Of a DNA stretch of 64,000 nt, positions 4,048-59,752 are shown piece after piece (the stretch's first letter is position 1; every line of letters begins with the position of its first letter). The position numbers and the translations under genes were made by a program. The stretch spans positions 62,001-126,000 of the IMG/VR virus record IMGVR_UViG_3300022745_000017. One strand, written 5' to 3'. A model generated the notes under the pieces. The model did no database searches, was not told the DNA's origin, and was given only the letters and a program-made list of their open reading frames with translations.

Positions 4048-5031
4048 ATGCCTGAATCCTCTGACGACATCGAACAAATGTCCACCGAAGAGCTTGAAAA
4101 AGCTACAGCACCGGAAGAAACACTGACTCCAAGGGTAGAATTCCCTGTGGTTGGTGAACCAGAGCAAATCAAGCTCCCACAGTCTGTGGTCGACACGATC
4201 AAGTGGTTCTGTGAGAGGCCGCTAGTTGAGCTTGGTTCACAAACCGGTCAGCCAGTGGTTGTACCCGGAACCGTTGACGAGCCGCCTTTCTCGCCCCGTG
4301 GAAACATTGCGCCTGTACTGACTTCGGATGACCCGCAGTTTACCACCGCCGATAAGCCGGCTGAAGACCAAATCGCCTATGCGCGTGGCCTGACTCCGCA
4401 CGTCGTACAGATCGATGAATCCCCTTTTCAACCCTACCCATCTGAAGGAACTACCGTGAACCAACCTGAACAACTCACCCAGCCCGAAGAAGTCGAAGCC
4501 GCCCTGGCCCAAGAAGCCGTGCAAGCCGCTGTAGAAGTCGCTGCCAAAGTCTTCGAGAACAATGAGTTTCCAGCAGCTGTCAACGAGTACCTCGACAGCT
4601 TGCAAGGCAGCGACAAGTTCGAAGTGATCCATCTCTTTGAGCGCTTGCGCGAATACGTCAAGGGCATGGATCTCAAGAACGTCCAAAACGCTCAAACTGG
4701 CGCAGCCCATCAGCACACGCTGTTCAGCGCCATCATGCAGTTGTTTGAGCGTGTCGATTCGCAAGACTTCCGCACCGCCTTCACCTACGTGCGCCAAGTG
4801 TTTGCTCATCACCAAAAGACCATCTTCAGCTCCGACGCTGCGATGCGCTTTGTGGCCAACATGGATCTGGAAGCCAGTGAAAAAGACAGCTTCACGCGCC
4901 TGCTGATGCTGCTGATGCGCACCACCGGCAGCGACTACGCCTTGGCCGTAAAGAGCCTGAACCTGGGCCGCTGTATCGCTGGCCTGAGCGAAGAAGCACA
5001 GATGCGCGTGATCTCGTACTTCAAGAACTGA
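4048..5031 (+). CDS. Hypothetical protein with Pro/Glu-rich N-terminus and helical C-terminal domain (gp81-like position)
   Basis: 327-aa ORF, AGGAG RBS, C-ending codon bias. Confidence 0.8.
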   Translation: MPESSDDIEQMSTEELEKATAPEETLTPRVEFPVVGEPEQIKLPQSVVDTIKWFCERPLVELGSQTGQPVVVPGTVDEPPFSPRGNIAPVLTSDDPQFTTADKPAEDQIAYARGLTPHVVQIDESPFQPYPSEGTTVNQPEQLTQPEEVEAALAQEAVQAAVEVAAKVFENNEFPAAVNEYLDSLQGSDKFEVIHLFERLREYVKGMDLKNVQNAQTGAAHQHTLFSAIMQLFERVDSQDFRTAFTYVRQVFAHHQKTIFSSDAAMRFVANMDLEASEKDSFTRLLMLLMRTTGSDYALAVKSLNLGRCIAGLSEEAQMRVISYFKN

Positions 5032-5170: not shown

Positions 5171-5731
5171 ATGCGAAATCTAAATTGCACTATTGATGTC
5201 TCATATTTTAGTGATGTTAGTGGTCCCGCGCCCTGGCTGTTACCTCATCTGGACTGCGGCATGGGATCTATTCTGCGACTACCTCTTACCGAAGTTATGT
5301 TTCCAAAGATGAGAAGTGCTGCGATTGACTTTCAGCAGAGTCTCATCAAAGGCAATGCGCTAGACGCCGTGGGGAAAATTCTCTTATGCCTAAATGAATG
5401 GGATGAGATTGAAATCTCTGCTTACGCAACGGTTGGATATAGTTGGTTAGCTAGTTGCTATGCTAAAACACAGAGTGTGGCTGACAAGTTTCTAGTGAGT
5501 GGGCAGTATATTCGCAAGGAGCTATCTGATTATTACAACCATATTTACGCTGTGTGGCGCGATAAACAAACCAATGATGAAACAATAGAGAGTCTGTACA
5601 ACCGTGTTGGGAAGGCGCTTCGAAATATGTTGTTCATGGTCTATACCCTGACCAACAACAATGAAGCGCTGGCGACTACGCTTATGGGGGAGTATGTAGA
5701 TACCCTAGCTGAGCAATTAGCCAAAGCGTAA
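5171..5731 (+). CDS. Hypothetical protein (AT-rich moron-like insert)
   Basis: 186-aa ORF with its own promoter, AAGGA RBS and downstream hairpin. Confidence 0.7.
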   Translation: MRNLNCTIDVSYFSDVSGPAPWLLPHLDCGMGSILRLPLTEVMFPKMRSAAIDFQQSLIKGNALDAVGKILLCLNEWDEIEISAYATVGYSWLASCYAKTQSVADKFLVSGQYIRKELSDYYNHIYAVWRDKQTNDETIESLYNRVGKALRNMLFMVYTLTNNNEALATTLMGEYVDTLAEQLAKA

Positions 5732-5743
5732 TTACTCACGGTG

Positions 5744-5776
5744 CTGATACCTCGGCTAACTTAGCCGAGGTATCAG
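5744..5776 (+). terminator. 16-bp inverted repeat
   Basis: ctgatacctcggctaa-c-ttagccgaggtatcag just after the stop codon. Confidence 0.65.
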
Positions 5777-5794
5777 TGACTTATTTGATCCTAT

Positions 5795-5871
5795 TTTTCT
5801 TCAGTCACATATATCGGTAGTGAGTTGGTAATGATGCTACGCTGACTCATATCCTTTAATGCATCAAGGAG
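5795..5871 (+). ncRNA. Conserved promoter plus pseudoknotted 5' leader, copy 1
   Basis: P1 5821-5828/5842-5849; loop TGATGC 5832-5837 complementary to GCATCA 5861-5866; GGAG 5868-5871. Homologous to 12967-13037 and 59450-59526. Confidence 0.65.
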
Positions 5872-5878
5872 TTCTATC

Positions 5879-6322
5879 ATGGCTACAAAGTTTTCCCTGA
5901 GTGCAGCAGACTTCTGCTTGTCTGAAGAGCAAATCGCTGCTGTCAATCTGACCGTGGAAATGGGAAGCGAGGCTTCGGCCCGCTTCCATCAGAAGTACGC
6001 TGCTTTGCGAGTGGTGCTCTTGCCGGCATTTGTGCCGGCGCGTTTGAAGGCCCTGCGTGATGTCGGTGTCCAAGCCGTCCCCGTGGAAGCAGGCACAATT
6101 GAAGTGCACCTTCCACTCATCGCATGGCTGAAGGCCAGTCCTAGCTGGGATGTGCCGGCAGTGCCAGCCCCATCGAGCCGGGGTTACACTCGGTCTACGA
6201 CCACTTCACTCGGTGAAGTGGTTACAGTCATTGTGGTCGCTGCGGTGTGTTACGCCGCCATCTTCTACATCGCGCGCGGCATCGTCCGCGCGCTCGACGG
6301 TGAGCATGACCGAGCAGCCTGA
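5879..6322 (+). CDS. Hypothetical protein with C-terminal transmembrane helix
   Basis: 147 aa; hydrophobic VVTVIVVAAVCYAAIFYIA; GGAG RBS. Confidence 0.75.
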   Translation: MATKFSLSAADFCLSEEQIAAVNLTVEMGSEASARFHQKYAALRVVLLPAFVPARLKALRDVGVQAVPVEAGTIEVHLPLIAWLKASPSWDVPAVPAPSSRGYTRSTTTSLGEVVTVIVVAAVCYAAIFYIARGIVRALDGEHDRAA

Positions 6323-6392: not shown

Positions 6393-8078
6393 TTACATTG
6401 TTGCAATCATTTTGTCATAGGCTTGTACGATTTGCTCAAGGGTCGGGGCTCCGCAGATCAGTGTCACAATCTCAACAGCGTTAGTGCGTCCAGCAGACAG
6501 ATTGATGGTCTGCATGCGCTGCAAATCCTCAGAGATGCCTTCGATACGAATAGGCTCCTTAGAAGTCGTTTGCTTACACATGTTAAACACACACTGCCCA
6601 TTAGGGTAGCTGCCTGAGACATCTAAGTCAAACACAAAGATACGGATGTTAGTCCGCAAGTTTTGGTTTTCTAAGACGCACTTGAGCCCGTTGTCTGCCA
6701 CCATGTGAGACGGTAGCATAACGATCCAACCATCGATGCCAAGTGTCTCATCGTCAAACTCATCAGCCATCTCTTTAGAGGTCGTGGCCATGACGTGGCC
6801 GCGCTTTAAGACAAAGTGGTGTAGAGCGTCAATGGTGCGCTTAGGCTGAGATGGGAACTTCTCAAAGTCCGTACAACCTGCAAACAGTGGGAGCTGAATA
6901 GCCATGTCTTTGGTGACATCGTCGAGCTCCTCCATAATGACTACGTCACCTTGGTTATAGATGATGTACTCAAGTGGGTGGTACTTTTGCATGAATTGGT
7001 GTTTAGCCAACCCTTGGTATTTCTTAGCTGGTTCGAACTCAAGTTTGCTGGCCTTGGTGTTCTTTCTCACCAAGGCATCTAGGCCATAGCTAGGCTCCTC
7101 AGGTGAGCCTTGACGGCACTGATAGTAGCCGCACATCTGGTCGATGATGTAAAACGACGCAGGTGCGATCACTGTGTTCCAGCGATGCACGGGCTTGAAG
7201 TTCATGCGCTTGTTAGCGTTGGTAATGCGGTTAGCTTTACCTTCGATGAACTCGTAGTAGCGATAGCTAGCTGGAATGCTTGGGTCACTAAAGAGGTCTT
7301 CTAGCTTGACGTTAGCGCGAGCACATGCTTCTTGAATACGCCTGATGTCAAAGACCATGTTCCAGATACCTAGGAAGTCTGGTTTGATCTCGTGCGCTTT
7401 ACCAATAGACTTTTGAACGACTTCAATTTCTGTGTCGCAGAAGACGTAGTGCAGCGTAAGGTTGCGCCGCTTGATCAAGTCGCCTAAGTGCTCAGCAGCT
7501 AGGGCGCGTAATCTCTCTTCGACATTGGTGTAGCCTGCTACAAACCGCTTTTGTACATACGTGTAGACATTTGTCTTATGGCTGATAGAAGCCATCAAGA
7601 TGTGATTCTTGGTGTCGTAGTGCACGACATCAGTCTCGGTGTCGTACCCCGCAAAAGTATAAGCCGTGTTAAGGCCGTACTTGTCTAGGTAAGACTGTTT
7701 GAGCAAAGATGTCGAGCTGATGTCTGCGCCGTAGATGTAGGGAGACTTCTGTAAGTCACGCTGTGAGCCTCTAAACCACGGCATCTCCATAGAGGTAGCC
7801 ATCGAGCGCACCAGCCTGGTTTGAGTAGACTCGTAGCGATTGAGTCTCTCAATTTCCTCCCACTCTTTCTTATCCTCGTGATTGCGAAAGCCTTTCTTGG
7901 TAATGTAGTATGGGCGTTTATAGTTTAGAATCTTGCGCAGGTAAGGCACAATGGTGCCATCGTCTAGGTGGATCTGTTCTTTGACGACATGAACATCGTC
8001 GTCTGTTTCCTTATTTTTTACACAAATAGCAAAGCGGCACTCAATGCCGCGAATACGAGATGGGTCGATTTTTGACAT
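6393..8078 (-). CDS. N-terminal subunit of a split family-B DNA polymerase (3'-5' exonuclease plus palm motif A; phiKZ gp82-like)
   Basis: ExoI GYDTETD, ExoII WNMVFD, ExoIII YNQGD, then motif A-like DLDVSGSYP. The ORF ends before motifs B and C. Confidence 0.85.
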   Translation of the reverse strand: MSKIDPSRIRGIECRFAICVKNKETDDDVHVVKEQIHLDDGTIVPYLRKILNYKRPYYITKKGFRNHEDKKEWEEIERLNRYESTQTRLVRSMATSMEMPWFRGSQRDLQKSPYIYGADISSTSLLKQSYLDKYGLNTAYTFAGYDTETDVVHYDTKNHILMASISHKTNVYTYVQKRFVAGYTNVEERLRALAAEHLGDLIKRRNLTLHYVFCDTEIEVVQKSIGKAHEIKPDFLGIWNMVFDIRRIQEACARANVKLEDLFSDPSIPASYRYYEFIEGKANRITNANKRMNFKPVHRWNTVIAPASFYIIDQMCGYYQCRQGSPEEPSYGLDALVRKNTKASKLEFEPAKKYQGLAKHQFMQKYHPLEYIIYNQGDVVIMEELDDVTKDMAIQLPLFAGCTDFEKFPSQPKRTIDALHHFVLKRGHVMATTSKEMADEFDDETLGIDGWIVMLPSHMVADNGLKCVLENQNLRTNIRIFVFDLDVSGSYPNGQCVFNMCKQTTSKEPIRIEGISEDLQRMQTINLSAGRTNAVEIVTLICGAPTLEQIVQAYDKMIATM

Positions 8079-12613: not shown

Positions 12614-12961
12614 ATGATCACCCGTTTTACGATCTTCATACACACCCCCGAGTCAAAGACACTTGTGGAACAGCTCCCTGATGGTATTTCTCTGAGTTAT
12701 CCAGAAGTGCTGATGGACAGCCAGGCTGACTTAGAGACGTTCTTGATCAAAGACTTAGGTATCCCGAAGGCTGCCGAAATTGCTTGGTTCAATGATGCTT
12801 TTTGTATGGTTCACATTCGTGTCGACCCGTCGGTAAACCAGATGCTGGCTTTGCGCAAGTATTGGCCTGACATCGCTGGCTTACCGTGGGATGATGCTAG
12901 GACACGCCGGTTTGTACATCGCCCAATTGACCTCACTAAGAAGAATAGTTCGAACCTATAA
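12614..12961 (+). CDS. Hypothetical protein
   Basis: Start moved to MITRFT after the GAGGA/AGGG RBS. Confidence 0.65.
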   Translation: MITRFTIFIHTPESKTLVEQLPDGISLSYPEVLMDSQADLETFLIKDLGIPKAAEIAWFNDAFCMVHIRVDPSVNQMLALRKYWPDIAGLPWDDARTRRFVHRPIDLTKKNSSNL

Positions 12962-12966
12962 AAACA

Positions 12967-13037
12967 CAGTCACATATGCCGTTAGTGACTTGAGTAATGA
13001 TGCTAGCTTGAGTCACTCACTAATGTGCATCACGGAG
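12967..13037 (+). ncRNA. Conserved promoter plus pseudoknotted leader, copy 2
   Basis: P1 12984-12994/13007-13017; TGATGC 12998-13003 with GCATCA 13027-13032; GGAG 13034-13037. Confidence 0.6.
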
Positions 13038-13043
13038 ATAGAT

Positions 13044-13469
13044 ATGGCTAAGAAAGAGTTGGTTCGTGTGCGAGCTTTCCTTCAAAACGAAGAGGGTAAG
13101 TATCTCGTACTGTACCGCAAGTACAGTGAAAAGAAGGTGATCATGTGCCTGCCGGGTGGTGGCGTGGAAGAGGGTGAAGATCCCCTGCAAGCGTTGCACC
13201 GCGAGGTGCAAGAAGAAGTATCGTTACGGCTGAAAAGCCCGGTACACATCGGTGATCATTGTGTGCCAGGCGCGTATGAAGGGTATGAGAATACCCGATT
13301 TAGCTTCTATAGCGCGGGATGGGATGGGGAAGTCTTCATGCCACCCCAAGAGGTGGCTAAGCACGCCGGCTACGAATGGCTCACTAAATCTGAGATCGAG
13401 TGGGGTGGGGCGCTTAAGGTGGGGCGCTGTACCGAATATGGGCACGGCATTCTGTCGATGTTGGCTTAA
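13044..13469 (+). CDS. Nudix hydrolase
   Basis: Nudix box LPGGGVEEGEDPLQALHREVQEEVSL; start MAKKELV after GGAG. Confidence 0.9.
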   Translation: MAKKELVRVRAFLQNEEGKYLVLYRKYSEKKVIMCLPGGGVEEGEDPLQALHREVQEEVSLRLKSPVHIGDHCVPGAYEGYENTRFSFYSAGWDGEVFMPPQEVAKHAGYEWLTKSEIEWGGALKVGRCTEYGHGILSMLA

Positions 13470-13515
13470 GACATAGGCAGTACAGCGAGTGGCGTAAGCC
13501 ACTCGCTGTACTGCC
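13470..13515. terminator. 18-bp hairpin with GTAA loop between convergent genes; TATGTC follows on the minus strand
   Basis: ggcagtacagcgagtggc-gtaa-gccactcgctgtactgcc; T-run on the plus side. Confidence 0.75.
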
Positions 13516-13527
13516 CGTACTTCTTTT

Positions 13528-16443
13528 TTATTTCTTCGACACGATCTTGAAACTAATGTCGATGGCATTCTCGACAGTCAGTCTGCCATCAGTAGATGCG
13601 GCTAAGCGCTTCTTCAGAGACAATCGGTCTGAGTCGCTCACTAGCGTAACGACACTATAAGTATCGTCGATCAGTTTGCTAATCTCCACATCGTGCAACA
13701 GATCACCTAAGACATCTCGGATATCTGCAATGATGGCACTCACACTCACAATGCTCTTATCAAGACCACGCTTGATTGCTTTGATGGTCGCTTCTCGCAG
13801 CGTTGAGCAAAGCACGGTGTTGTTGTAAGTCTTTTCCGTGACATAGAGTTTGACGGTAAATGACTGAGCTGCGCTCACACTTCGCTGGGTAGAACCGTCC
13901 ACCAGCACATTGACTTGACCTTGGTCGACCTTCGGGTGGAAGTAAATAGCTGTGCGGTCAAGCACGCGCTTGTTCATCTCCACCAGGGTGTCTGTGATCC
14001 AATCCACCATCGTGCTGATAGCTGTCTTCAGGTAGTTTGTGGCTGATGCGTCAGTTGCGAAGTAGTAAGCTCCGTCGATCAGTGTAACCCCGATATGGCG
14101 AACCAAGGCAGCTCGGTAATTGGGGTCAGGGATCGGTACACCATTAGCGTCCAAAATCACATCACCCTCTCGGTAAGCGTAAATCGGCTGACCTGAGCCA
14201 TCTAACTGAGCGTCGCCTGCGCTATGGAGCTTTTGATTCCATGTCAACACGCCATCAACTACAGTAAATGGCAAGCCTGTGGTCGGGTCTAGCTGATACA
14301 CATCTTGCTCATATGTCAGCACGATGTCAGCCGTTCTGCGCAGGTAGTTCTGCACAGATACACTGCTGCGGTGCTGAGCCCACAAATTCTTGAGTGCAGT
14401 ACCAAACTTGAGCTGTATAGTTTCGTGTGTGAGGCCGTGAAACCCTTGTGTCAATTGATCGTCGGGTAACAATGCATCAAAGCTACTGGGCAAAGGTGTG
14501 TCGACAGATTTGTGACTATACACCAAGTCAAACGACTGTAGCAAATCACAGTAAGCGGTGGATGCACTACCGCCTTGTGTCACATCGGTCAAGAACAGTC
14601 TATCGTTGGCATCGATGAAGAAGTCTGTACTCAGAATGAACCGGTACTTGCGCTCATCGCTGCTGGAGATGCGCGCTATCAGACTGCCTTCAATATGGTA
14701 GCGAACACCGTCTGCTGGAGAAACAAATGACAACCACACACTCAGGTTGGCGTCATCTTCTGCTTTGAAGAAATCATTGGAAGACGTGTAGACATCTAAG
14801 GTGTAGAACTGCTGGAATCGCTTAAGGATGTAGTTACCTGCCGTAGCGACACTCAAGATGGATTCATCTTGATAATCTACAAAACTCTTGGTCACCGCCA
14901 GAGGGGCTTCCAGGTAGTAAGGCCTGACAGACAAAACATCTGTTTGCGCATCGATCACGTAGTGAAACGGTGAGAATGCATAAGCGTTTGTTTTGAAGTG
15001 CTCTGCTAGTTGCGCAGGAGTTAGTGCTAGCAAGGCATTGACTTCTTGTGCATCGAGCATGGTGTAAACACCATTGTCGTAGCGATAAAGTGTCTTAGGC
15101 GAGAGTGTCACTGCTTTGTCGCTGTGGTCAGTGACGCCGTAGCCGAGCATCGCTTGCTTGAGCGTCATCTCACACATCGCTAGCGACGAGGAGGCAGCGC
15201 CTAACAGCGGGTTGTCTGTTGGTGCCGGTAGGCCAGCCGTAGCCAGGTAAACTCGGCTCGTCACAGTGTCAACATCCTTGACCAAGGTGAAGCCTTGTTC
15301 TTCAAGTGCTGTGCTGAGCTGAGCGTCTGTGATGGGGATGTCTTGCACACCTAGTGAGCGATCAATTACACGCTGGCGAATAGTCTCAAAGCTATCGGGG
15401 TCACTACCACCCGTGACAACGTCAGTGGAGTAAACCATAGCGTTATCGATATTACCAAACGCTGCGGTATAAACGGTCGAATCCGAAGGGTCGATGGCTT
15501 TCCACTCATACTGCCAATCGCTCGGGCTGTACGCTGACAAAGCCATGTTGACAGCGCCCAAGGTCTCGTACACCACGATGCGGATACGCCCCGATGCTAA
15601 GCCGCTGGCAATGTAGTTGACAGGAATTATCACAGTGACTTTCTTATCACTGTACTGAACGATCGCTGTCAATACCAAGGGGTCATACAGGTAGGTCGAA
15701 GAGGTAGTTTGAATCTCTTTCCAAACACCTGAGACCTCCTGCCACACTCGCACAGCGTAGGGCTTGTCAGAGATGGTGATATCTGTCTTGAGTCCAGATG
15801 TCCACGACAAGTCTACCAAACGAGTTGTTGTTTTGAACTGATCGGTAGGGATCTTGAGCTGGAAATACTCTTGTCTATCTGTGGCAGTAAATGCCAGTGT
15901 CTCGATCTCATTGGTACTCAAAGACTTCAATGGGGAAACAACGTCGAGATCCCACTTTACGACAATCGCACCACTAGCAGTTTCCTGGATGACAATCGGG
16001 TATTGCATCGAAAACGTGGTCGAGCCTACCTTGAAGCATGAGTCCCGTGGAATCACTAACTTACGAGAAGCTGTGTTGGGGATGTCTACAAAGTTAGCCA
16101 AAAGATCGCTTTTGCGCAAAATCAAGTAAACCCAAGTGGAAGCCGGCTTGGCCCACAGGCCAATCTGGTCTTGGGTTGACATGTGCGGATAGAGCTCTTC
16201 CATGGTGGTGGCTAAGCGAGGATGTGTCTTGCGCAAGGTGGCTTGCAACTCATCGCACACAGCAGCTGTGCCAGCGGTGAAGGCTTCTAGCAAAAACACC
16301 ACAGGGTTGCTGGGATCGACGATATCGATCTCACCGGCGTTAGCCTTGTCCAGTGCTTTGAACATGACTTCGCGCATACTCAGTGGGTTATACTTGTAAT
16401 TGGCCAAGTCACCGACATAATCGCTAAATTTAGATGCAGCCAT
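13528..16443 (-). CDS. Baseplate wedge protein (T4 gp6/baseplate-J-like; phiKZ gp87-like)
   Basis: 971 aa from MAASKF; baseplate-J-like TGGSDPDSFETIRQRV; size and position match recalled gp87. Confidence 0.75.
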   Translation of the reverse strand: MAASKFSDYVGDLANYKYNPLSMREVMFKALDKANAGEIDIVDPSNPVVFLLEAFTAGTAAVCDELQATLRKTHPRLATTMEELYPHMSTQDQIGLWAKPASTWVYLILRKSDLLANFVDIPNTASRKLVIPRDSCFKVGSTTFSMQYPIVIQETASGAIVVKWDLDVVSPLKSLSTNEIETLAFTATDRQEYFQLKIPTDQFKTTTRLVDLSWTSGLKTDITISDKPYAVRVWQEVSGVWKEIQTTSSTYLYDPLVLTAIVQYSDKKVTVIIPVNYIASGLASGRIRIVVYETLGAVNMALSAYSPSDWQYEWKAIDPSDSTVYTAAFGNIDNAMVYSTDVVTGGSDPDSFETIRQRVIDRSLGVQDIPITDAQLSTALEEQGFTLVKDVDTVTSRVYLATAGLPAPTDNPLLGAASSSLAMCEMTLKQAMLGYGVTDHSDKAVTLSPKTLYRYDNGVYTMLDAQEVNALLALTPAQLAEHFKTNAYAFSPFHYVIDAQTDVLSVRPYYLEAPLAVTKSFVDYQDESILSVATAGNYILKRFQQFYTLDVYTSSNDFFKAEDDANLSVWLSFVSPADGVRYHIEGSLIARISSSDERKYRFILSTDFFIDANDRLFLTDVTQGGSASTAYCDLLQSFDLVYSHKSVDTPLPSSFDALLPDDQLTQGFHGLTHETIQLKFGTALKNLWAQHRSSVSVQNYLRRTADIVLTYEQDVYQLDPTTGLPFTVVDGVLTWNQKLHSAGDAQLDGSGQPIYAYREGDVILDANGVPIPDPNYRAALVRHIGVTLIDGAYYFATDASATNYLKTAISTMVDWITDTLVEMNKRVLDRTAIYFHPKVDQGQVNVLVDGSTQRSVSAAQSFTVKLYVTEKTYNNTVLCSTLREATIKAIKRGLDKSIVSVSAIIADIRDVLGDLLHDVEISKLIDDTYSVVTLVSDSDRLSLKKRLAASTDGRLTVENAIDISFKIVSKK

Positions 16444-22006: not shown

Positions 22007-23545
22007 ATGGCACGCTACCGCCTCGCAGTAGAAGACGATCAAACCGACAACGCAAACACCAGCACCGATGATGGTGGGTCTGTTGGGGATGATCCTGTTC
22101 AACAAGATGACAAGATTGTCATCCCCGATCTGAAAGATCTCAACGTCAATGAAGTCGCCAAAGCTGAGCATGAGATCAAGAAGGATCTGGAGACTCAGCA
22201 AAAGGATATGACTGAAGCCAGCATTCCTGAAGAGCAGCGCACAGTCGCTCTGAAGGACGCACAGGTGGACACCCAAGGACTGCTTACCTCGCTGGAGAGC
22301 TTGATCAAAACCATGGGCAATGGTCGGGCGGCAGACTACCACCAAGCTCGCCAAGCTGACGTGTATCTCAAGCAAGTCAAGAAGCAAAACGGCTTGCAGA
22401 CGAAGTATTGGTACACAGTGGAGAACTTCGCTGCACAAGCTCGCAAGGCTCGTGAAACTGAGTACATGTGTGAAGGCTTTGTCGATACGCTCAAAGAGAT
22501 CTGGAACGCTTGTATGCGTCTGGTGGACAAAGCGATCGCTTGGTTCAAGGGATTCATCAGCAAGTACTTCTTCACGGTGAAAAACGACATCGAAGTCTCC
22601 AAAGACACGATGGGTGAGATCAAGGCGCTCGACAAGATCAATGGGGAGAAGATCATCCCTACTGATAAGAAGCACTGGATCAATTCACCTGAGCTGTTCA
22701 TGCAGCTCTCAATTGAGAACACCATCCCGAACTTGAAGACGCACTTCGAGAACGTCTATCAGCTCTCCCGGACTTACTCTGCGATTGAGAAGAACTTTGC
22801 ACCGAAGTTCATGGAGATCTTGGAAGAACATCTGGAAGTGTTGTCCAAAGACGGTGGGTCTCTGGCGGGTTTCAAGAGTCGCTTTTTGCCGGATGCCGAG
22901 GCTTACACGCTGACAGATCAACTCCTGCAACTCAAGCAGTCTGGCGGCAATCCTACGTTTAACAGTGAGTTCAACGGCGAGAAGGCGCTGCCTGGTTACG
23001 GCTGGATGGAAACCATCGACATGCCCGGCAACTTTGTGATCGGCTATCACACTGCAACGGTTTCCCAAAACCCTAGCCTGCGCAATCACCTCGATACGAT
23101 CATGGGCCTGGAGTTCTTGCGTGACTGGAAGATCAAGTGTGTGCGCAACACCTTCGCACAGACGCAAGACGGCTGGTTCCCTTATGGCTCAGCGGCTGAG
23201 CTAGAAGAAGTTACGGCGCTGCAAGTCAAAGCGCTGCGTGAGCTGGAGACCTTTGAGAAAAATCCCGACAGCGTAGAGCGGGTGTTTCAAAAGCTCAAGG
23301 CAATCGCTGAGAAAGCTAAGGTACAAGCGGCTGGCGTTGATCCCAAGAAGCTGGATGCAACAGGTGTTGAGAGTCTGAAGTACGTCAACACGATGGTGGC
23401 TGCAATCAACACAGTGATCAGCAACTTGAACTATGCCATCGCTGAGATCGGCAAGTACATCCGTGGGGTTTGCTTGGCTTGGAACTACTTCCTGAAGCTG
23501 GTCAAGCAAGAATACATCAAGGCAGGTGCTGCTAGCCGGAATTAA
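22007..23545 (+). CDS. phiKZ-type internal head protein (gp93-97 family)
   Basis: Acidic propeptide, TVE and MCE sites, then amphipathic LKEIWNACMRLVDKAIAWFKGF. Confidence 0.8.
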   Translation: MARYRLAVEDDQTDNANTSTDDGGSVGDDPVQQDDKIVIPDLKDLNVNEVAKAEHEIKKDLETQQKDMTEASIPEEQRTVALKDAQVDTQGLLTSLESLIKTMGNGRAADYHQARQADVYLKQVKKQNGLQTKYWYTVENFAAQARKARETEYMCEGFVDTLKEIWNACMRLVDKAIAWFKGFISKYFFTVKNDIEVSKDTMGEIKALDKINGEKIIPTDKKHWINSPELFMQLSIENTIPNLKTHFENVYQLSRTYSAIEKNFAPKFMEILEEHLEVLSKDGGSLAGFKSRFLPDAEAYTLTDQLLQLKQSGGNPTFNSEFNGEKALPGYGWMETIDMPGNFVIGYHTATVSQNPSLRNHLDTIMGLEFLRDWKIKCVRNTFAQTQDGWFPYGSAAELEEVTALQVKALRELETFEKNPDSVERVFQKLKAIAEKAKVQAAGVDPKKLDATGVESLKYVNTMVAAINTVISNLNYAIAEIGKYIRGVCLAWNYFLKLVKQEYIKAGAASRN

Positions 23546-23757: not shown

Positions 23758-25101
23758 ATGGCTCGAATCAAACTGGTTACCGAAGGCCTGGACGAACCCC
23801 TGGGCGGCGATGGCGCGGTGGAGGATTCCTCACAACTGCCCGAAAACGACATGGCCGAAATGGCCACCGCTCAAGAAGAAATCGACGATCTGGCCGATGG
23901 CGTGAACGAGTCGATCGATTCCGCCCAAGTGCTGACCGATGCCGCTGACGACGTGCAAGCTTCGGTGGACAGCGGCGAAGGCTTGACCGAACCTGCCGCA
24001 CAAGCGCTGGAACGCCTGGCCAACAAGATCTGCGCCGGTGTGGGTGTGTGGAAAGCTCCGCTCAAGATCGCTCGTGAAGGCCACAAGCTGCCGATCACTC
24101 GCGTGCAAGCAACCAAAGAAGCCCTCGACGGTCTGCGTGAGCGCATCAAGAAGATCTGGGAATCGGTCAAGAAGTACTTCTGGAAGGCCGTCGAAGCCGT
24201 CAAGAACTTCTTCAAGGGCCTGTTCAACTCGGCTACCAAGCTGAAGAACCGCGCCGAATCCATCAAGAAGAAGGCTGTGGAGCTCAAGGACAAGAAGTAC
24301 GGTGCTGAAGCCAAGGTCGATGCCGACAGCTTTGGCCAACCCCTGCGCAAAAACAACAAGCTGGCCGAGGTCGCAACCATTTCGCTGTGGGCAAGTGGCT
24401 TTTCCATGGGTGACAAGGGCGCTCTCAAGAAAGCCAGTGTCGAATCCATCGCTGAGTTCTCCACTGCGGTGAAAGACGCCATTGGCAGCGTTGATGTCGA
24501 AGCCGATTTCGACAGCAAGCTCAACAAAGCCTTCTCGCTGTTCAGCACCAAGCTGGCCATGGCCAGCGCCAAGCAAACGAAGTCAGCAGACCACCCCGCG
24601 CCTGCTGGTTGCAACGTCTACGAACAAGAGCTGGCGATGGGCGACATGTCCATTTACGCTATCAATCCGATGGCGTTCACCAAAGCTGCTCTGAAACCAG
24701 TTCTGAACAGCTTGAAGATCACGATCGGCAAGAAGGACGGTTTCAAGGACGATGTGAAGTTCGGTGAAGTGGCCCCGTTGCCGCAAGCGACCATCGAGTC
24801 GTTGGCGGAAAACATCGCCAAAGGATGCGCAGGCATCGAAGGTGAAACCAAGGTCGTTGCTGAAATCGAAAAGATGGGCAAAGATCTGGAAGCAGCCTGC
24901 AACGAAGCGGCCAAGAAGGGAGGGGAGGACAAAGACAAGCAAAAGGTCGTTGCCGAAAACTCGCCTTTGGCCTCCACCGCCGCCAAGGTGGCCCAGAACC
25001 TGCTGGGTCAACTGGCTGCCGGTTTGAAGAGCTGGGAAATCAAGACCGCCAAGGGCGCTCTTGACTACTGCTCGGCTTCGCTGGCCAAGCTGGAAGACTG
25101 A
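23758..25101 (+). CDS. phiKZ-type internal head protein, likely high copy
   Basis: Start MARIKLVTEG; ARE and TKE sites, then RIKKIWESVKKYFWKAVEAVKNFF; very strong C/G-ending codon bias. Confidence 0.8.
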   Translation: MARIKLVTEGLDEPLGGDGAVEDSSQLPENDMAEMATAQEEIDDLADGVNESIDSAQVLTDAADDVQASVDSGEGLTEPAAQALERLANKICAGVGVWKAPLKIAREGHKLPITRVQATKEALDGLRERIKKIWESVKKYFWKAVEAVKNFFKGLFNSATKLKNRAESIKKKAVELKDKKYGAEAKVDADSFGQPLRKNNKLAEVATISLWASGFSMGDKGALKKASVESIAEFSTAVKDAIGSVDVEADFDSKLNKAFSLFSTKLAMASAKQTKSADHPAPAGCNVYEQELAMGDMSIYAINPMAFTKAALKPVLNSLKITIGKKDGFKDDVKFGEVAPLPQATIESLAENIAKGCAGIEGETKVVAEIEKMGKDLEAACNEAAKKGGEDKDKQKVVAENSPLASTAAKVAQNLLGQLAAGLKSWEIKTAKGALDYCSASLAKLED

Positions 25102-25130
25102 TGAGCCTGTAGTAACCCTACAGACCTAAA

Positions 25131-25164
25131 TAGAGGCAGGGGATCAAACCCCTGCCTCTATGCC
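25131..25164 (+). terminator. 12-bp hairpin plus TATGCC
   Basis: tagaggcagggg-atcaaa-cccctgcctcta, then tgcc. Confidence 0.7.
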
Positions 25165-25211
25165 GCATGTTCTTATCTTTTGATTCACCACCTAACTTTG
25201 CGAGAATTATC

Positions 25212-26720
25212 ATGGCCTACAAGCTTGTGCAAGAAACGTCCAATCCTGTTACTGTCACGATGCTGAACATCGTGGAAACGAGCATCTCTTTGAATCGCTC
25301 ATTTGAAGAAGCCGAGGAAATGCTCGATAACATCTGTACTGTCCAAGATCTGAAAGACGATCTCGAACCCATCACCGATGGTAAAGAGATCGCTGCTCTG
25401 GGGGCAGTCATCGAGCACTTTGTCACTAAGTTACATGCTTCTGTTCAAGTACCCACCTATGAGAGCTACATGGGTAATAAGTCTCAACTAGCTTTGAAGT
25501 ACACCAAAGAAGGCGTAGGTAGTGCATTGAAAGCTGGTTGGGATTGGTTGATCGAGCTGATCAAGACCATCGTCGAGAAGATCGGTAACTTCTTCAAGTC
25601 AGTGTGGGCGTGGTTGTTTGGTAAGGATAGTAGCTCTATATCTTCGTCTTCAACTGAGGTCAAGAAGGCTGAAGTGGCAGTGCAACAGGTCATCAAAGAA
25701 AATGTCAGTAAGCCATCGGCTGCTAAACCTGCTGAAGTCATCAAAACTGTCGAACAGATCAGCAAAGCCGGTACAGAACCACCGGTAAATGGAAAGCCAA
25801 AGATAGACATCGCCGAATTGCAAAAACGGCTTGAAGAGACAAAGAAGGGAGAGGAAGACGCTGCCAAGGCCGTAGCTGAAGTTGAAGCTGCTCACAAGCA
25901 AAGCTACTTATCTGGCTTCCAGAAGGCTATTAACAACAACAACGAACTTTTTGCTGACTTTTATAGTAGTAACGCTCCGATAGATGAGAATGGTAATCCC
26001 TTATACAAAAAAATAGGGGTATCACAGCTTTCGGAGATGTATAAGAGTATTGAAGAGCTTATGGATAAAACTAAATTATTTGGTCACAATTACCTAGTAG
26101 AGTTAGGCAAAAACACGACCACCGCTCTAATCGAGTCCGATTTATTTAAGGCGTTTAAATCTGACGTTAATCAAGACGTAACTACTAAAGACGAGTACGA
26201 AAAACTCATCGATCAAATAGCCTCTAAGTTTTTTATGGAGTTAGACATATTCGTAGGTTTCAAAGTAAACAAAAAGATGAAGTCACGGCCACTAGAAAAT
26301 GGTTCGAAAATTCCATCTGTAGAGAGCACTTATGTCGAGCCAAAAATACCTTACGTCGCTGTACTCGACCACGATAGCTTTAGTGCGGATAACTACTCAC
26401 ACGTAGAGACCCAGCGAGAAAAGCTTCGCTCTAAAATCGGCGTGTCTTTAAAAGATTTAAATGGTGTTAGTGATAAAATGCAAGCAGATGCTGATGCAAT
26501 TCTCACTAAGTTTAAAGATGAGCTGCCAAATAGACGATACAAGCAGGTCATCGAATTCTCCACCTATGTGGTTCAGGGGGCAATCCGAAACATCCTTAAA
26601 GTAATGCAAAATATTTTACAGGCGTTCCACAACCTGATGGACTTCGATAAGCGAATCACTGGCCATGGGGTCGCGCTGCGTAACTTACATATTAGTTTAG
26701 AAGAAGCTAAGAAGAGCTAA
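25212..26720 (+). CDS. phiKZ-type internal head protein with AT-rich C-terminal domain
   Basis: TYE and TKE sites, GWDWLIELIKTIVEKIGNFF; compositional shift after ~25900. Confidence 0.75.
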   Translation: MAYKLVQETSNPVTVTMLNIVETSISLNRSFEEAEEMLDNICTVQDLKDDLEPITDGKEIAALGAVIEHFVTKLHASVQVPTYESYMGNKSQLALKYTKEGVGSALKAGWDWLIELIKTIVEKIGNFFKSVWAWLFGKDSSSISSSSTEVKKAEVAVQQVIKENVSKPSAAKPAEVIKTVEQISKAGTEPPVNGKPKIDIAELQKRLEETKKGEEDAAKAVAEVEAAHKQSYLSGFQKAINNNNELFADFYSSNAPIDENGNPLYKKIGVSQLSEMYKSIEELMDKTKLFGHNYLVELGKNTTTALIESDLFKAFKSDVNQDVTTKDEYEKLIDQIASKFFMELDIFVGFKVNKKMKSRPLENGSKIPSVESTYVEPKIPYVAVLDHDSFSADNYSHVETQREKLRSKIGVSLKDLNGVSDKMQADADAILTKFKDELPNRRYKQVIEFSTYVVQGAIRNILKVMQNILQAFHNLMDFDKRITGHGVALRNLHISLEEAKKS

Positions 26721-26741
26721 TCATTTACAAGGACAAGTGAC

Positions 26742-28046
26742 ATGCCAACACTCATTGAACTAGCCGGAAGCGACTTCGATTCGCCTAACGGTAAAGCCAG
26801 CCTCTACACCGAACCTGAAAATATCGGTGAAGTCCCTATCAACCTGGTAGACCCAGAAGCACAGAGCATCTTCGACTCAGAATCTGAGCGGGTTGAGGAA
26901 GTGGTCGATGCAACTGGGGCTCTAATCGATGCTTCTGGCGACATCCAGAAAATGAACCCAGCTGACACTGGTGCATCAGCTTACAACGCCTTGCGAGCTG
27001 TGACAGAAAAGCTGATGCGCACCATCGATCCGCAGAAAGCTTACTTCCCTGTCATGGAGCAGTATGCAGGACTGGCCAATAAGCGACAAGTCTTACAGCG
27101 GTCGTTTGAAGCCATGTCGGATCTGATCATCGCCGGTGTTCGCCACATCGTTGAGTGGATCAAGAAGGTGGGTATCTGGGTGCGTAACCTTTTCCAAAAG
27201 GCTCGCACCTCTTCCGAGGGCATCGCCACGCGTGCTAAGCGCATTCAAGACGATGCCAAGGATGCCATCATCAAGAAGCTCCCCAAAGACGCTGCGGTGA
27301 CTTCAGATACCCTGCTGCGCTACTTCTCCGCTGACGGCACAGCCATCAAGAGCGATCACATCGCTGTGGAGTATAAGCGCTACACCTCAGAGATCGGCGG
27401 TACGTTTGGTGTGGATCTCGTCAAGCGTGCTGGTGACCAGGTCTTGGCTGTGATCCCAGAAGTCACCAAAGACACGGACAAAGCAGCAGTCCTTGGCAAG
27501 ATCGATCCCATCATCACAGATCTGCGCAATCAGTTGCTCAAGCACTTCAAAGAAGGTTTTGGTGACCAAAAGAGCGACGCCAACAATCACATCATCAGCT
27601 ACAAGCTGCCGTTTAACAATGAGTCGCTTGTTTGCACGATACAGATTGAAGACGGCAAACAAACCAGCATGAAAATGCTGGGGCAAGATGTCAAGACCAA
27701 AGGCCAAGTCAAAGACAAGAGTCTGGATGTGCTCTCTGCCAATGAGGTCGGTATGCTCGCTAAGCTAGTCGAGGAGCAAGCTACCTACGGCATCTATAAG
27801 CAGCATGACACCATCGTCGGTGAAGTCAACAAGATCGAGAATGCGATCAACAAGGCCACTAACGACTTGGTCAAGATGATCGAGGCTAAGCCGCAAGAAG
27901 CCAAGAAAGACATGTACAGCTTGGAGTTCTTGCGCTCGATCTTCACAGCCATGGCCAAGTATGTGGACTTGTTCTACAACTACGACGTGCGGGCTGCTGG
28001 GCGTATCCTAGACTACTGTGAAGCCAGTTTGTTGAAGTACGAATGA
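26742..28046 (+). CDS. phiKZ-type internal head protein
   Basis: VME and SFE sites, GVRHIVEWIKKVGIWVRNLF; C-terminal ILDYCEASL matches ALDYCSASL of the 23758 gene. Confidence 0.8.
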   Translation: MPTLIELAGSDFDSPNGKASLYTEPENIGEVPINLVDPEAQSIFDSESERVEEVVDATGALIDASGDIQKMNPADTGASAYNALRAVTEKLMRTIDPQKAYFPVMEQYAGLANKRQVLQRSFEAMSDLIIAGVRHIVEWIKKVGIWVRNLFQKARTSSEGIATRAKRIQDDAKDAIIKKLPKDAAVTSDTLLRYFSADGTAIKSDHIAVEYKRYTSEIGGTFGVDLVKRAGDQVLAVIPEVTKDTDKAAVLGKIDPIITDLRNQLLKHFKEGFGDQKSDANNHIISYKLPFNNESLVCTIQIEDGKQTSMKMLGQDVKTKGQVKDKSLDVLSANEVGMLAKLVEEQATYGIYKQHDTIVGEVNKIENAINKATNDLVKMIEAKPQEAKKDMYSLEFLRSIFTAMAKYVDLFYNYDVRAAGRILDYCEASLLKYE

Positions 28047-45042: not shown

Positions 45043-46632
45043 ATGGAATCTCTTTTATTGCCAACAGAGGTCACCTTTTCCTCACTCAGAGGACTGTCGA
45101 CTAACAAAGATCGACAGATTACAGATGGGGTTCTGCGAGTGATTCTCGCAGGCGACTACGCTGGGGCACTGATTTCAAGCGGAGTGAAGTATTACTCTTT
45201 TAACCCCAACAAACTCATTGATGAGTCTAGTGAGCGAGACTTTCCAATAAAGCCACAGCCCTTTAACCTCAGTGATCCGAGACTCTTTATTAAAGATGGC
45301 TGGATCTGGTTGAAGTGGTTGGAACCCCAGTGTTATCACGAGATCAAACTCTGTCAAAGTGAAGGAGTCATTAGCGATCCAACTACTACGTCACACGGCA
45401 GACCATTGATAGGGTATCTGGCTGAGGGCTTGCGACTATCCAGACAACAACTCCAAAAGGACAAACATTCTGAGGAGTGGTTCCATCAGCTACAAGTGCT
45501 CATCGGGTACATCCTGGCAGTAAACAGCTTTAATCAAATGCACTTTTCGGGCTACAAAGAAAAGCCCAATCTGGAGTTCTCTATGTCTGAACAAAAACAC
45601 TTCCATTTCCCCAAGATCCCCGACTTCTACAAAGCTCAGCGTGATATGCGCAAGTATTGTGAGTACAAGAAGATCCCTCTGCCCGTTCAGCGGTTTCGTG
45701 GCACCCCTAAGCTGCATGGAACCAATGCGGGGGTGTTGATGAGCTTGCGAACCAAAGAGATCTATGCGGTCTCTCGTGAGCAAATCCTCAGTGACCAACT
45801 CCCCTTGGGTGGCTTTTACGCTCACTTCAAGGAAAACGAAAACTTCTATCGCATCTATCTCGAAGCCATGGTGGATAGTTTGCCACACAGTGAGAATGCG
45901 ACACATGTCGGTGTGTGGGGTGAGTGGGTTGGTGCTGGTGTTCAAGCGCTGTTTAACAAGGCCGCCATCTCCAAGATCCCCAAGACACACATTCTCTTGC
46001 GCGGTGCGTTCATCACTGACCGAGGTGAAAAGGAATCACTGAAAGAGTGGTTCCACCGCATCAACCACGATTTCTGGATCAACGCGGTGGACGACTTGCT
46101 GCCGTGTGCAAGGCACATCTTCGAGTTCCCTTGCCTGGAAGTCGAGGTGGACTTCACAAAGCCCGATGCGATCCAAAACGAACTGGTAGTCTATACCCAG
46201 GCTTACGAGAAAGAGTGTCCTGTGGCAGCTACCTACGGGATCAACGGCGTGGGTGAAGGCATCGTTTGGCACAATGTGCCTGATGGTGGGGATTGGCCTG
46301 ACATCACTTTCAAGGTCAAGGGCCAAGAGCACAGCAAGTCGCATGTACGACCCCTGGATGCGAAGAACCAAGATAAGGTGGAAGCCATCAATCGGTTCGT
46401 AACCGAAGCTGCTTCACCGATGCGCATGTCTGAGATCGCGCAGAAGATGAAAGACAATGGCTACGAGCTGATTTACGAATACCGAAATGTCTTCGTGGGT
46501 CGTGTGTGTAAAGACATCCACGATGAAGAGGCGTGGAAGCTGGAAAACACGGACATTGGTTGGGGCAACTGTACACCGGGGATTGTGCGTATCGCGCACA
46601 ACTGGTGGGCTGAGCTAACCAAGATGGCTTAA
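45043..46632 (+). CDS. Rnl2-family RNA ligase with a 180-aa N-terminal extension
   Basis: Motif I PKLHGTN, motif III WGEW, motif IV GEGIV, motif V FKVKG; internal GGAG-ATG at 45583. Confidence 0.85.
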   Translation: MESLLLPTEVTFSSLRGLSTNKDRQITDGVLRVILAGDYAGALISSGVKYYSFNPNKLIDESSERDFPIKPQPFNLSDPRLFIKDGWIWLKWLEPQCYHEIKLCQSEGVISDPTTTSHGRPLIGYLAEGLRLSRQQLQKDKHSEEWFHQLQVLIGYILAVNSFNQMHFSGYKEKPNLEFSMSEQKHFHFPKIPDFYKAQRDMRKYCEYKKIPLPVQRFRGTPKLHGTNAGVLMSLRTKEIYAVSREQILSDQLPLGGFYAHFKENENFYRIYLEAMVDSLPHSENATHVGVWGEWVGAGVQALFNKAAISKIPKTHILLRGAFITDRGEKESLKEWFHRINHDFWINAVDDLLPCARHIFEFPCLEVEVDFTKPDAIQNELVVYTQAYEKECPVAATYGINGVGEGIVWHNVPDGGDWPDITFKVKGQEHSKSHVRPLDAKNQDKVEAINRFVTEAASPMRMSEIAQKMKDNGYELIYEYRNVFVGRVCKDIHDEEAWKLENTDIGWGNCTPGIVRIAHNWWAELTKMA

Positions 46633-59449: not shown

Positions 59450-59526
59450 TTTTCTTCAGTCACATATATCGTCAGTGTGTTAGTGATGATGCTAATCTGA
59501 CACACTCCTTTATCTGCATCGTGGAG
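59450..59526 (+). ncRNA. Conserved promoter plus pseudoknotted leader, copy 3
   Basis: P1 59474-59483/59497-59506; TGATGC 59487-59492 with GCATCG 59516-59521; GGAG 59523-59526. Confidence 0.65.
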
Positions 59527-59532
59527 ATTGAA

Positions 59533-59631
59533 ATGAAAAACGTACTGATTACCGCAAGCCTGGTCAACGTGCTGACCAAGTTGACGGGTTGGTGGCTGGA
59601 GCTAGGCTGGGACGGTGAGTGGTGTACGTGA
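59533..59631 (+). CDS. 32-aa Trp-rich peptide
   Basis: MKNVLITASLVNVLTKLTGWWLELGWDGEWCT; GGAG RBS, own promoter/leader and terminator. Confidence 0.6.
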   Translation: MKNVLITASLVNVLTKLTGWWLELGWDGEWCT

Positions 59632-59686: not shown

Positions 59687-59752
59687 TGATCAAAATAATA
59701 TCACCCGCATATCATCCCTTTGAGCACTGTCGCTCACAACGGAAAGAAACAA

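What the first reader, a model, noticed from the sequence alone, without database searches (positions are those of the whole stretch)
12967..13046. Leader copy 2 controls a Nudix hydrolase and has a competing helix
Seen: this is the most diverged copy (CACATATGCC; 11-bp P1), yet loop, GCATCA and GGAG spacing are conserved. TTAGTG (12982-12987) can alternatively pair with CACTAA (13018-13023) in the linker. Inference: if the motif senses a ligand, a nucleotide derivative is the natural guess from this gene context.
Basis: partly seen in the sequence, partly recalled or inferred. Interest (0 to 1): 0.6.

Follow-up and report, generated by a model that had tools for sequence, protein, structure and literature searches.

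The report
Phage early-gene leader with pseudoknot
The stretch in front of the Nudix gene is one of 13 copies of a portable expression cassette in a giant phage (a predicted phage promoter followed by a short leader RNA that folds into a pseudoknot beside the ribosome-binding site), and nothing ties it to sensing nucleotides.

Summary
The described sequence features are all present at 12967-13046. The window lies in a 218-kb phiKZ-like jumbo phage genome that carries 13 good copies of the element, not 3.

Each copy has the same order of parts:
- an AT-rich stretch and a CAGTCACATAT box, which fits published descriptions of virion-RNA-polymerase early promoters;
- a 9-12 bp hairpin, P1;
- a G-poor linker;
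- a 5-7 nt segment complementary to the P1 loop (TGATGC:GCATCA);
- GGAG and the start codon.

The loop-to-downstream pairing makes an H-type pseudoknot. It is backed by compensatory changes: one pair is AU in 10 rows and GC in 6, another is CG in 11 and UA in 4. Overall 87.6% of cells pair, against 33-41% in slid controls. In two related phages the P1-to-pseudoknot segment is 100% identical, while the adjacent genes are 78-86% identical.

Only 1 of the 13 downstream genes is a Nudix hydrolase. The competing helix is real, and is 8 bp rather than 6, but it is specific to copy 2 and may lie upstream of the transcription start.

Best reading: a mobile early-expression cassette with a structured 5' UTR. 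The leader's function is inferred, not shown.

The parts
12953..12987 (+). Predicted phage early promoter of copy 2: C.A (12956-12958), an AT-rich run, the CACATAT box (12971-12977), 8 variable nt, then the invariant TG (12986-12987) near the inferred transcription start.
   Evidence: The same layout is shared by the 13 leader copies and 15 other mostly intergenic sites in the genome. It fits published descriptions of phiKZ and 201phi2-1 early promoters (PMC7598289, PMC8244752, PMC11512511). No sigma-70-like promoter is found here. The start site is inferred, not mapped.
12984..13017 (+). Hairpin P1: 12984-12995 pairs with 13006-13017, with a 10-nt loop at 12996-13005. The core that covaries is 12987-12995 with 13006-13014.
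   Evidence: RNAfold. 9 of the 11 pairs show changes on both sides across the 16 aligned rows (13 paralogous copies, 2 orthologs, 1 degenerate copy).
12998..13003 (+). Pseudoknot 5' strand, TGATGC, inside the P1 loop.
   Evidence: Pairs with 13027-13032. One pair is AU in 10 rows and GC in 6, another is CG in 11 and UA in 4, and 91.5% of cells pair.
13018..13026 (+). Linker (pseudoknot loop 3), CACTAATGT. It holds the 3' half of the copy-specific competing helix.
   Evidence: Linkers of all copies are G-poor (4 G in 133 nt) and show no excess pairing to the Shine-Dalgarno region. This linker is 100% conserved in the ortholog L015.
13027..13032 (+). Pseudoknot 3' strand, GCATCA.
12980..12987 (+). 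5' half of the competing helix, CGTTAGTG, which pairs with 13018-13025. It overlaps the base of P1 and the predicted promoter and start site.
   Evidence: Not conserved in the paralogous copies.
13034..13046 (+). Shine-Dalgarno GGAG (13034-13037), a 6-nt spacer and the ATG (13044-13046).
   Evidence: The spacer varies between orthologs.
13044..13469 (+). Nudix hydrolase gene, 141 aa, with an intact Nudix box.
   Evidence: Pfam NUDIX E 1.4e-15. No NCBIfam subfamily reaches its cut-off.
13476..13535 (+). Terminator-like 18-bp hairpin (13476-13515) followed by a T-rich run, which closes a one-gene unit.
   Evidence: 100% conserved in L015.
5802..5881 (+). Leader copy 1: box 5806-5812, P1 5820-5829 with 5841-5850, pseudoknot 5832-5837 with 5861-5866, ATG 5879. 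It precedes a 147-aa ORFan.
59457..59535 (+). Leader copy 3: box 59461-59467, P1 59474-59483 with 59497-59506, pseudoknot 59487-59492 with 59516-59521, ATG 59533. It precedes a 32-aa ORF.

Best explanation
The region is one copy of a modular early-expression cassette of a phiKZ-like jumbo phage.

DNA part (about 12953-12987): a promoter, most likely read by the phage's own multisubunit RNA polymerase. Transcription probably starts at or near the invariant TG (12986-12987).

RNA part (about 57 nt): a 5' UTR that folds from its first nucleotides into hairpin P1. The P1 loop pairs with the 6 nt lying 1 nt upstream of the Shine-Dalgarno sequence, giving a compact H-type pseudoknot. GGAG and the ATG sit just 3' of it.

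Shown here:
- The element is repeated 13 times in the genome.
- Both helices are kept by compensatory change.
- The folded segment is under purifying selection.
- The copies precede mostly unrelated genes, and 9 of the 13 are preceded by a terminator-like hairpin.

Inferred:
- The promoter assignment and the start site.
- The role of the pseudoknot. I propose it is a constitutive leader that shields the 5' end and the AU-rich linker from 5'-end-dependent decay, and presents a standard ribosome-binding site whatever gene is plugged in behind it.

The Nudix gene is simply one cargo of this cassette.
For: - Phage identity: the window is part of a 217,973-bp virus record that encodes a phiKZ-type RNA polymerase beta subunit (PHROG E 4e-114; best cultured relatives 39% identical).
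- Copy number: the covariance model finds 13 copies at E <= 8e-9, plus one degenerate copy. The box-to-start distance is 67-77 nt in the 12 copies measured.
- Structure: 87.6% of cells pair, against 33-41% in slid controls, and 0 of 500 shuffles reach the covariation score. One pseudoknot pair is AU in 10 rows and GC in 6, another is CG in 11 and UA in 4.
- Selection: P1 to the pseudoknot is 46/46 and 43/43 identical in orthologs whose adjacent coding sequences are 78.3% and 85.8% identical.
- Promoter: the same box, AT-rich stretch and N8-TG layout occurs at 15 further sites without the leader. This matches literature descriptions of early promoters of this phage group, whose downstream genes are hypothetical proteins (PMC7598289, PMC8244752, PMC11512511).
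- Units: 9 of 13 copies are preceded by an 11-18 bp hairpin, and the Nudix gene is followed by an 18-bp terminator-like hairpin.
- Cargo: 12 of 13 downstream genes have no family and they are mostly unrelated.
- Modularity: the cassette slot differs in a syntenic relative.
- Linker: it is G-poor and shows no anti-Shine-Dalgarno enrichment, as expected for a pseudoknot loop rather than a switch.
Against: - There are no RNA data.
- The stability and insulator role is argued from architecture only.
- Nearest-neighbour folding gives only about 0.5 mean probability that the Shine-Dalgarno sequence is unpaired, and it cannot model the pseudoknot.
- Pairs at the base of P1 (alignment columns 19-21) lie upstream of my proposed start site yet pair in 10-14 of 16 rows. 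The start may therefore be a few nt further upstream.
- The family is known from one phage lineage only, so the paralogous copies are not fully independent.
Confidence: 0.6

Rival explanations
1. Operator model. The pseudoknot is the common binding site of a trans-acting protein from the phage or the host. That protein would co-ordinately repress, activate, time or localise translation of the 13 early mRNAs, in the manner of T4 RegA or gene 32 control.
For: - 13 unrelated genes share one leader.
- The whole folded segment, including the unpaired linker, is 100% conserved between orthologs.
- The two central pseudoknot pairs are invariant in every row with letters at both positions (UA 16/16, GC 15/15).
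- This model is compatible with the cassette model.
Against: - No RegA homolog is found in the genome.
- No candidate protein was identified.
- Linker sequences differ widely among the paralogous copies.
- The helices covary freely, so any recognition would have to be of shape.
Confidence: 0.2
2. Riboswitch model. The pseudoknot is an aptamer for a small molecule, such as a nucleotide derivative, that gates translation of the downstream gene.
For: - H-type pseudoknots next to a Shine-Dalgarno sequence are a common riboswitch architecture (general knowledge).
- Copy 2 has a competing helix that would be incompatible with the pseudoknot.
- Copy 2 precedes a Nudix gene.
Against: - Only 1 of 13 copies precedes a nucleotide-metabolism gene.
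- No Rfam family matches, even at E <= 10.
- Few unpaired positions are conserved.
- The Shine-Dalgarno sequence is outside the pseudoknot, and no conserved anti-Shine-Dalgarno helix exists.
- The competing helix is absent or weak in the other copies.
- All copies carry the same promoter, which points to temporal rather than metabolic control.
Confidence: 0.07
3. Recombination model. The repeats are kept alike mainly by duplication and gene conversion between cassettes, as with T4-type PeSL elements, and the RNA fold has no function of its own.
For: - The cassettes flank ORFans, and the slots are variable between relatives.
- Recombination between composite promoter and stem-loop motifs is documented in T4-like phages (PMC2839356, PMC4122927).
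Against: - Homogenisation does not produce compensatory double changes in two helices.
- The folded segment is more conserved than the promoter or the spacer between orthologs.
Confidence: 0.08
4. DNA-hairpin model. P1 acts in DNA as part of promoter recognition or pausing, as in N4 virion polymerase promoters, and is not transcribed as a functional RNA.
For: - Most promoter-like sites without the leader are also followed by a predicted hairpin.
Against: - The P1 loop covaries with a segment 25-30 nt downstream, next to the Shine-Dalgarno sequence. That makes sense only if both lie on one RNA strand.
- The stems are far longer than N4-type hairpins (general knowledge).
Confidence: 0.05

Closest known systems
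Early (virion RNA polymerase) promoters of phiKZ-like jumbo phages
   Same: A roughly 10-nt conserved box with a T- or AT-rich element upstream and conservation near -10, -20 and -30. It recurs about 30 times, mostly in front of small hypothetical genes, in a genome that encodes split beta/beta' RNA polymerase subunits (PMC7598289, PMC8244752, PMC11512511).
   Different: The box sequence (CACATAT) is specific to this phage. No start site has been mapped. In 13 sites the promoter is fused to a conserved structured leader, which the papers I read do not describe for phiKZ or 201phi2-1.
PeSL cassettes (promoter-early stem-loop) of T4-like phages
   Same: A conserved composite intergenic element of about 100 bp (AT-rich stretch, early promoter, stem-loop, Shine-Dalgarno sequence, start codon) that precedes ORFans in variable regions and gives each a ready-made expression signal (PMC2839356, PMC4122927).
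   Different: PeSL promoters are sigma-70-like, and their stem-loop sits within or beside the promoter and acts as a terminator. Here there is no sigma-70 match, the hairpin lies downstream of the box inside the 5' UTR and forms a pseudoknot, and separate terminator hairpins lie upstream. Recombination between copies was not tested here.
H-type pseudoknot leaders (preQ1-I-type riboswitches, T4 gene 32 leader)
   Same: A hairpin loop pairs with a segment downstream, close to the ribosome-binding site, with a G-poor A/U/C linker.
   Different: No Rfam model matches. The first stem is 9-12 bp, about twice as long as in preQ1-I. The Shine-Dalgarno sequence is not part of the second helix. The element occurs 13 times in front of mostly unrelated genes, not on one autoregulated or pathway-specific gene.

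Membership tests
Any Rfam family, including the known riboswitch classes | A match to the family covariance model. | tested here: not met
   No hit at gathering thresholds across the 64-kb window. Only chance-level hits (E 4-9) for 12900-13120.
Riboswitch (generic) | Association with genes of one metabolic pathway or ligand. | tested here: not met
   1 of 13 downstream genes is a Nudix hydrolase. The other 12 have no Pfam or PHROG family and are mostly unrelated.
Riboswitch (generic) | A set of highly conserved unpaired nucleotides forming a pocket. | tested here: inconclusive
   Only about 3-4 unpaired positions are near-invariant (the A before the pseudoknot strand, UA after it, U before GCATC). 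The linker is variable.
Riboswitch (generic) | Ligand-dependent structural change. | not testable with these tools
   Needs in-line probing or similar.
phiKZ-type early promoter | A conserved box of about 10 nt plus an upstream T- or AT-rich element, recurring before many genes. | tested here: met
   28 aligned sites share C.A, an AT-rich run, CACATAT and N8-TG.
phiKZ-type early promoter | The genome encodes multisubunit phage RNA polymerase subunits. | tested here: met
   phrog_2962 RNA polymerase beta subunit, E 4e-114. Homologs are found in phiKZ-like phages.
phiKZ-type early promoter | A transcription start mapped a few nt downstream of the box, with early timing. | not testable with these tools
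H-type pseudoknot | The hairpin loop base-pairs with a downstream single strand, supported by covariation. | tested here: met
   6 pairs, 91.5% of cells paired, 3 pairs with changes on both sides, and all four combinations of the two covarying pairs occur.
H-type pseudoknot | Loop lengths long enough to span the helices. | tested here: inconclusive
   Loop 1 is about 2 nt, loop 2 is 2-3 nt and loop 3 is 7-12 nt for a 9-12 bp stem. This is plausible by rule of thumb, but no 3D model was made.
PeSL cassette | A composite conserved intergenic motif with promoter, stem-loop and Shine-Dalgarno sequence in front of ORFans. | tested here: met
PeSL cassette | A sigma-70-like early promoter. | tested here: not met
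   No sigma-70-type match at the element. The box is CACATAT.
PeSL cassette | The stem-loop overlaps the promoter and acts as a terminator. | tested here: not met
   P1 lies downstream of the box and pairs with the region next to the Shine-Dalgarno sequence. Separate hairpins upstream (9 of 13 copies) look like the terminators.
PeSL cassette | Recombination between copies shuffles the flanked genes. | tested here: inconclusive
   The cassette slot holds different genes in a syntenic relative, and a neighbouring gene is replaced right at its ribosome-binding site in another relative. No recombinant junction inside a leader was seen.
T4 gene 32 / RegA-type translational operator | A cognate RNA-binding repressor encoded by the phage. 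| tested here: not met
   No PF01818 (RegA) match in the genome. The downstream genes are unrelated, so autoregulation by the product is unlikely.

The most novel reading that the evidence does not exclude
The pseudoknot leader is a responsive regulatory RNA that defines a 13-gene early regulon in a nucleus-forming-type jumbo phage. It would be either a new riboswitch class sensing a global host or phage signal, or the tag recognised by a phage factor that times, localises or protects early mRNAs. Copy 2's competing helix would be a tuned variant.
Probability: 0.15. Interest if true: 0.8.

Novelty: new variant of a known kind. Interest (0 to 1): 0.45.

Why it matters
Early genes of phiKZ-like phages are mostly unknown host-takeover functions, and little is known about how they are controlled after transcription. 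This element offers three things:
- A 57-nt pseudoknot leader with strong covariation, fused to the predicted early promoter and reused in front of 13 mostly unrelated genes, is a compact and testable handle on that control.
- It may be a natural insulated expression cassette of use in phage engineering.
- It extends the idea of promoter-plus-stem-loop gene cassettes from T4-like phages to a jumbo phage that uses its own polymerase.

For the original finding, the practical message is negative: the Nudix context does not point to a ligand.

Tried and rejected
- **Known RNA families:** none match.
- **Relatives in IMG/VR:** a 17-mer scan, a structured pattern and a polymerase-protein scan gave only chance hits or nothing.
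- **Cultured phages:** megablast and blastn of the region and the leader gave nothing meaningful.
- **JGI metagenome scan:** 65 hits, of which 64 lack the fold.
- **The one look-alike (L037):** it sits after a thiolase gene and is identical to a Leptolinea genome contig, L096. It lacks the GGAG-ATG part and is not found by the covariance model. I rejected it as a chance resemblance.
- **Conserved anti-Shine-Dalgarno helix between linker and ribosome-binding site:** no enrichment over shuffles.
- **Shine-Dalgarno accessibility by nearest-neighbour folding:** uninformative.
- **Conservation of the competing helix in the paralogous copies:** only weak analogues, at genome positions 137498, 145744 and 27243.
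- **RegA homolog:** none.
- **Nudix subfamily:** not resolved. The single-sequence fold had pLDDT 38, so no fold search was made.
- **Atlas look-up of the copy-1 ORFan:** nothing usable.

Full report
**1. What is at the site**

Window 12962-13043 is the 82-nt gap between an ORF ending at 12961 and an ORF starting at ATG 13044. That downstream ORF has a NUDIX domain (E 1.4e-15). Its Nudix box looks intact, but no subfamily model reaches its cut-off.

P1 pairs 12984-12995 with 13006-13017, which is 12 pairs including 3 G-U (-14.0 kcal/mol). The loop is AATGATGCTA.

**2. Copy number and genome**

The window is bases 62001-126000 of a 217,973-bp virus record with terminal repeats. The record encodes a phiKZ-type RNA polymerase beta subunit. 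The nearest cultured relatives, Ralstonia phages RP12 and RP31, are only 39% identical in that protein.

Three leader copies lie in the window. A covariance model built from 12 copies finds 13 in the genome at E <= 8e-9, plus one degenerate copy. All are on the + strand. In the 12 copies measured, the start codon lies 67-77 nt after the CACATAT box.

**3. Structure**

Counts come from the model-based alignment of 16 rows: 13 paralogous copies, 2 orthologs and 1 degenerate copy.
- The two helices pair in 87.6% of cells, against 33-41% when partners are slid by 1-3 columns.
- No shuffle out of 500 reaches the observed covariation score.
- In the pseudoknot helix, one pair is AU in 10 rows and GC in 6, and another is CG in 11 and UA in 4.
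- All four combinations of these two pairs occur, so the loop reads GATGC, GATGT, GGTGT or GGTGC/AGTGC, each with its matching partner.
- The two central pairs are invariant.
- 9 of the 11 P1 pairs show changes on both sides.

Because the loop covaries with its partner on the same strand, it is unlikely to pair with a common RNA elsewhere in the cell, such as rRNA.

The linker between P1 and the 3' pseudoknot strand is 7-12 nt and G-poor (4 G in 133 nt). It pairs with the Shine-Dalgarno region no better than shuffled linkers do. This suits a loop lying along a helix groove, not an anti-Shine-Dalgarno switch. GGAG follows the pseudoknot after 1-4 nt.

**4. Selection**

Two contigs from related phages carry orthologs, found through a Nudix protein 79% identical and a 142-aa protein 88% identical. 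Identity by segment is as follows:

| Segment | L015 (Nudix copy) | L085 (copy at 137498) |
|---|---|---|
| P1 through pseudoknot | 46/46 | 43/43 |
| Adjacent coding sequence | 78.3% | 85.8% |
| Promoter part | 92% | 92% |
| Shine-Dalgarno-to-ATG part | 73% | 86% |

**5. The 5' part is probably a promoter**

CACATAT occurs 37 times in the genome. I aligned 28 sites, most of them intergenic and facing a gene: the 13 leader copies and 15 sites without the leader. They share a layout: C.A, an AT-rich run, A at -3 of the box, CACATAT, 8 variable nt, then TG.

Reviews and transcriptome papers describe the early promoters of phiKZ-like phages in matching terms:
- a phage-specific conserved box of about 10 nt near -10, found by inspection upstream of early operons (PMC7598289);
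- a T-rich element further upstream (PMC8244752);
- conservation at -10, -20 and -30, with hypothetical genes downstream (PMC11512511).

No sigma-70-like promoter is predicted at the site. I therefore read 12953-12987 as an early promoter and place the start at or near the invariant TG. With that start, the 5' UTRs are 51-61 nt and begin inside the base of P1.

**6. Gene context**

- 9 of 13 copies are preceded by an 11-18 bp hairpin that looks like the terminator of the previous unit.
- The Nudix gene is followed by an 18-bp terminator-like hairpin.
- Between genome positions 136.9 and 139.7 kb, four leader-headed units stand in tandem.
- Only the Nudix gene has a recognisable family.
- The 13 products are unrelated, apart from one clear pair and one marginal match.
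- A syntenic contig from a relative with 50% polymerase identity has a different small gene and no leader in the slot that holds copy 1.

This pattern resembles the PeSL cassettes of T4-like phages (PMC2839356, PMC4122927). It differs in having a non-sigma-70 promoter and a hairpin that belongs to the 5' UTR.

**7. The competing helix**

The helix is real and longer than reported: 12980-12987 pairs with 13018-13025 (8 bp, -9.4 kcal/mol as a duplex, 0 of 500 shuffles reach it). It arises from a CACT-CACT repeat, which lets the base of P1 slip.
- As a full alternative it is less stable than P1 (-9.8 against -14.0 kcal/mol).
- The upper part of P1 stays formed (pair probability 0.998).
- It is identical in the ortholog but absent or weak in the other 12 copies.
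- 7 of its 8 5' nucleotides lie upstream of my inferred start.

Its relevance is therefore open.

**8. Mechanism**

I commit to the following. The cassette provides early transcription, and the leader folds constitutively from the 5' end. This leaves no free 5' tail or exposed AU-rich linker for 5'-end-dependent decay (general knowledge of RNase E and RppH) and places a standard ribosome-binding site after a fixed structure.

A shared protein operator is the main rival. A ligand-sensing riboswitch is unlikely for the reasons given in section 6 and under the rivals.

**9. Distribution and novelty**

No further members were found in IMG/VR, cultured phages, JGI metagenomes or GTDB genomes with the patterns used. 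One bacterial look-alike was rejected. The motif is not in Rfam.

It is best described as a new, lineage-restricted variant of two known kinds of element: promoter-plus-stem-loop gene cassettes, and pseudoknotted 5' leaders.

Noticed in passing
window 5110, 10070, 34141, 43531(-), 46635, 47988; further sites elsewhere in the genome: A second class of the same promoter-like motif (AT-rich run, aaCACATATCAcc, N, TG) without the pseudoknot leader. Most sites are followed by their own predicted hairpin, strong in several cases (for example 46635 and 47988, 11-14 bp stems).
   Followed up: partly
window 59533-59631 and 59720-61744: Leader copy 3 drives only a 32-aa hydrophobic ORF. After an 88-nt gap comes a 674-aa ORF with no Pfam or PHROG family. 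The small ORF may be a short membrane peptide or an upstream ORF.
   Followed up: no
G000:C1:136903-139654 (outside the window; L083): Four leader-headed units stand in tandem. Two of their products (genes starting at 136980 and 138487) are 32% identical paralogs.
   Followed up: partly
L085:556-1086 compared with G000:C1:138000-138360: In a relative 88% identical at the nucleotide level, the gene after the 142-aa ORF is replaced by an unrelated 172-aa ORF. The breakpoint falls right at the ribosome-binding site, an example of ORFan swapping.
   Followed up: partly
window 5171-6322 compared with L112:6689-7261: The slot between conserved genes (the homologs of window 4048-5031 and 6393-8078) holds two small genes here, one of them with the leader. 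In a relative with 50% polymerase identity it holds one unrelated 190-aa gene.
   Followed up: yes
window 48078-49385 and 52660-53880: Two paralogous AAA+-like ATPase genes about 4.5 kb apart. They share 72-74% identical DNA stretches (repeat families D4 and D17) and hit a PHROG of unknown function and a clamp-loader PHROG.
   Followed up: no
window 45043-46632: A 529-aa protein with an RNA ligase PHROG match (E 3e-30).
   Followed up: no
window 24904-27719: Lys/Glu-rich repeated DNA (family D3) in two of a run of consecutive ORFs of about 430-520 aa. A neighbouring ORF (22007-23545) hits an internal head protein PHROG.
   Followed up: no
L096 (Leptolinea sp. MAG) around 1249 on the minus strand; identical to L037: A bacterial intergenic sequence after a thiolase gene mimics the box, a 7-bp hairpin and a 7-nt loop complement, but it lacks the ribosome-binding part. 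Judged to be coincidence.
   Followed up: yes
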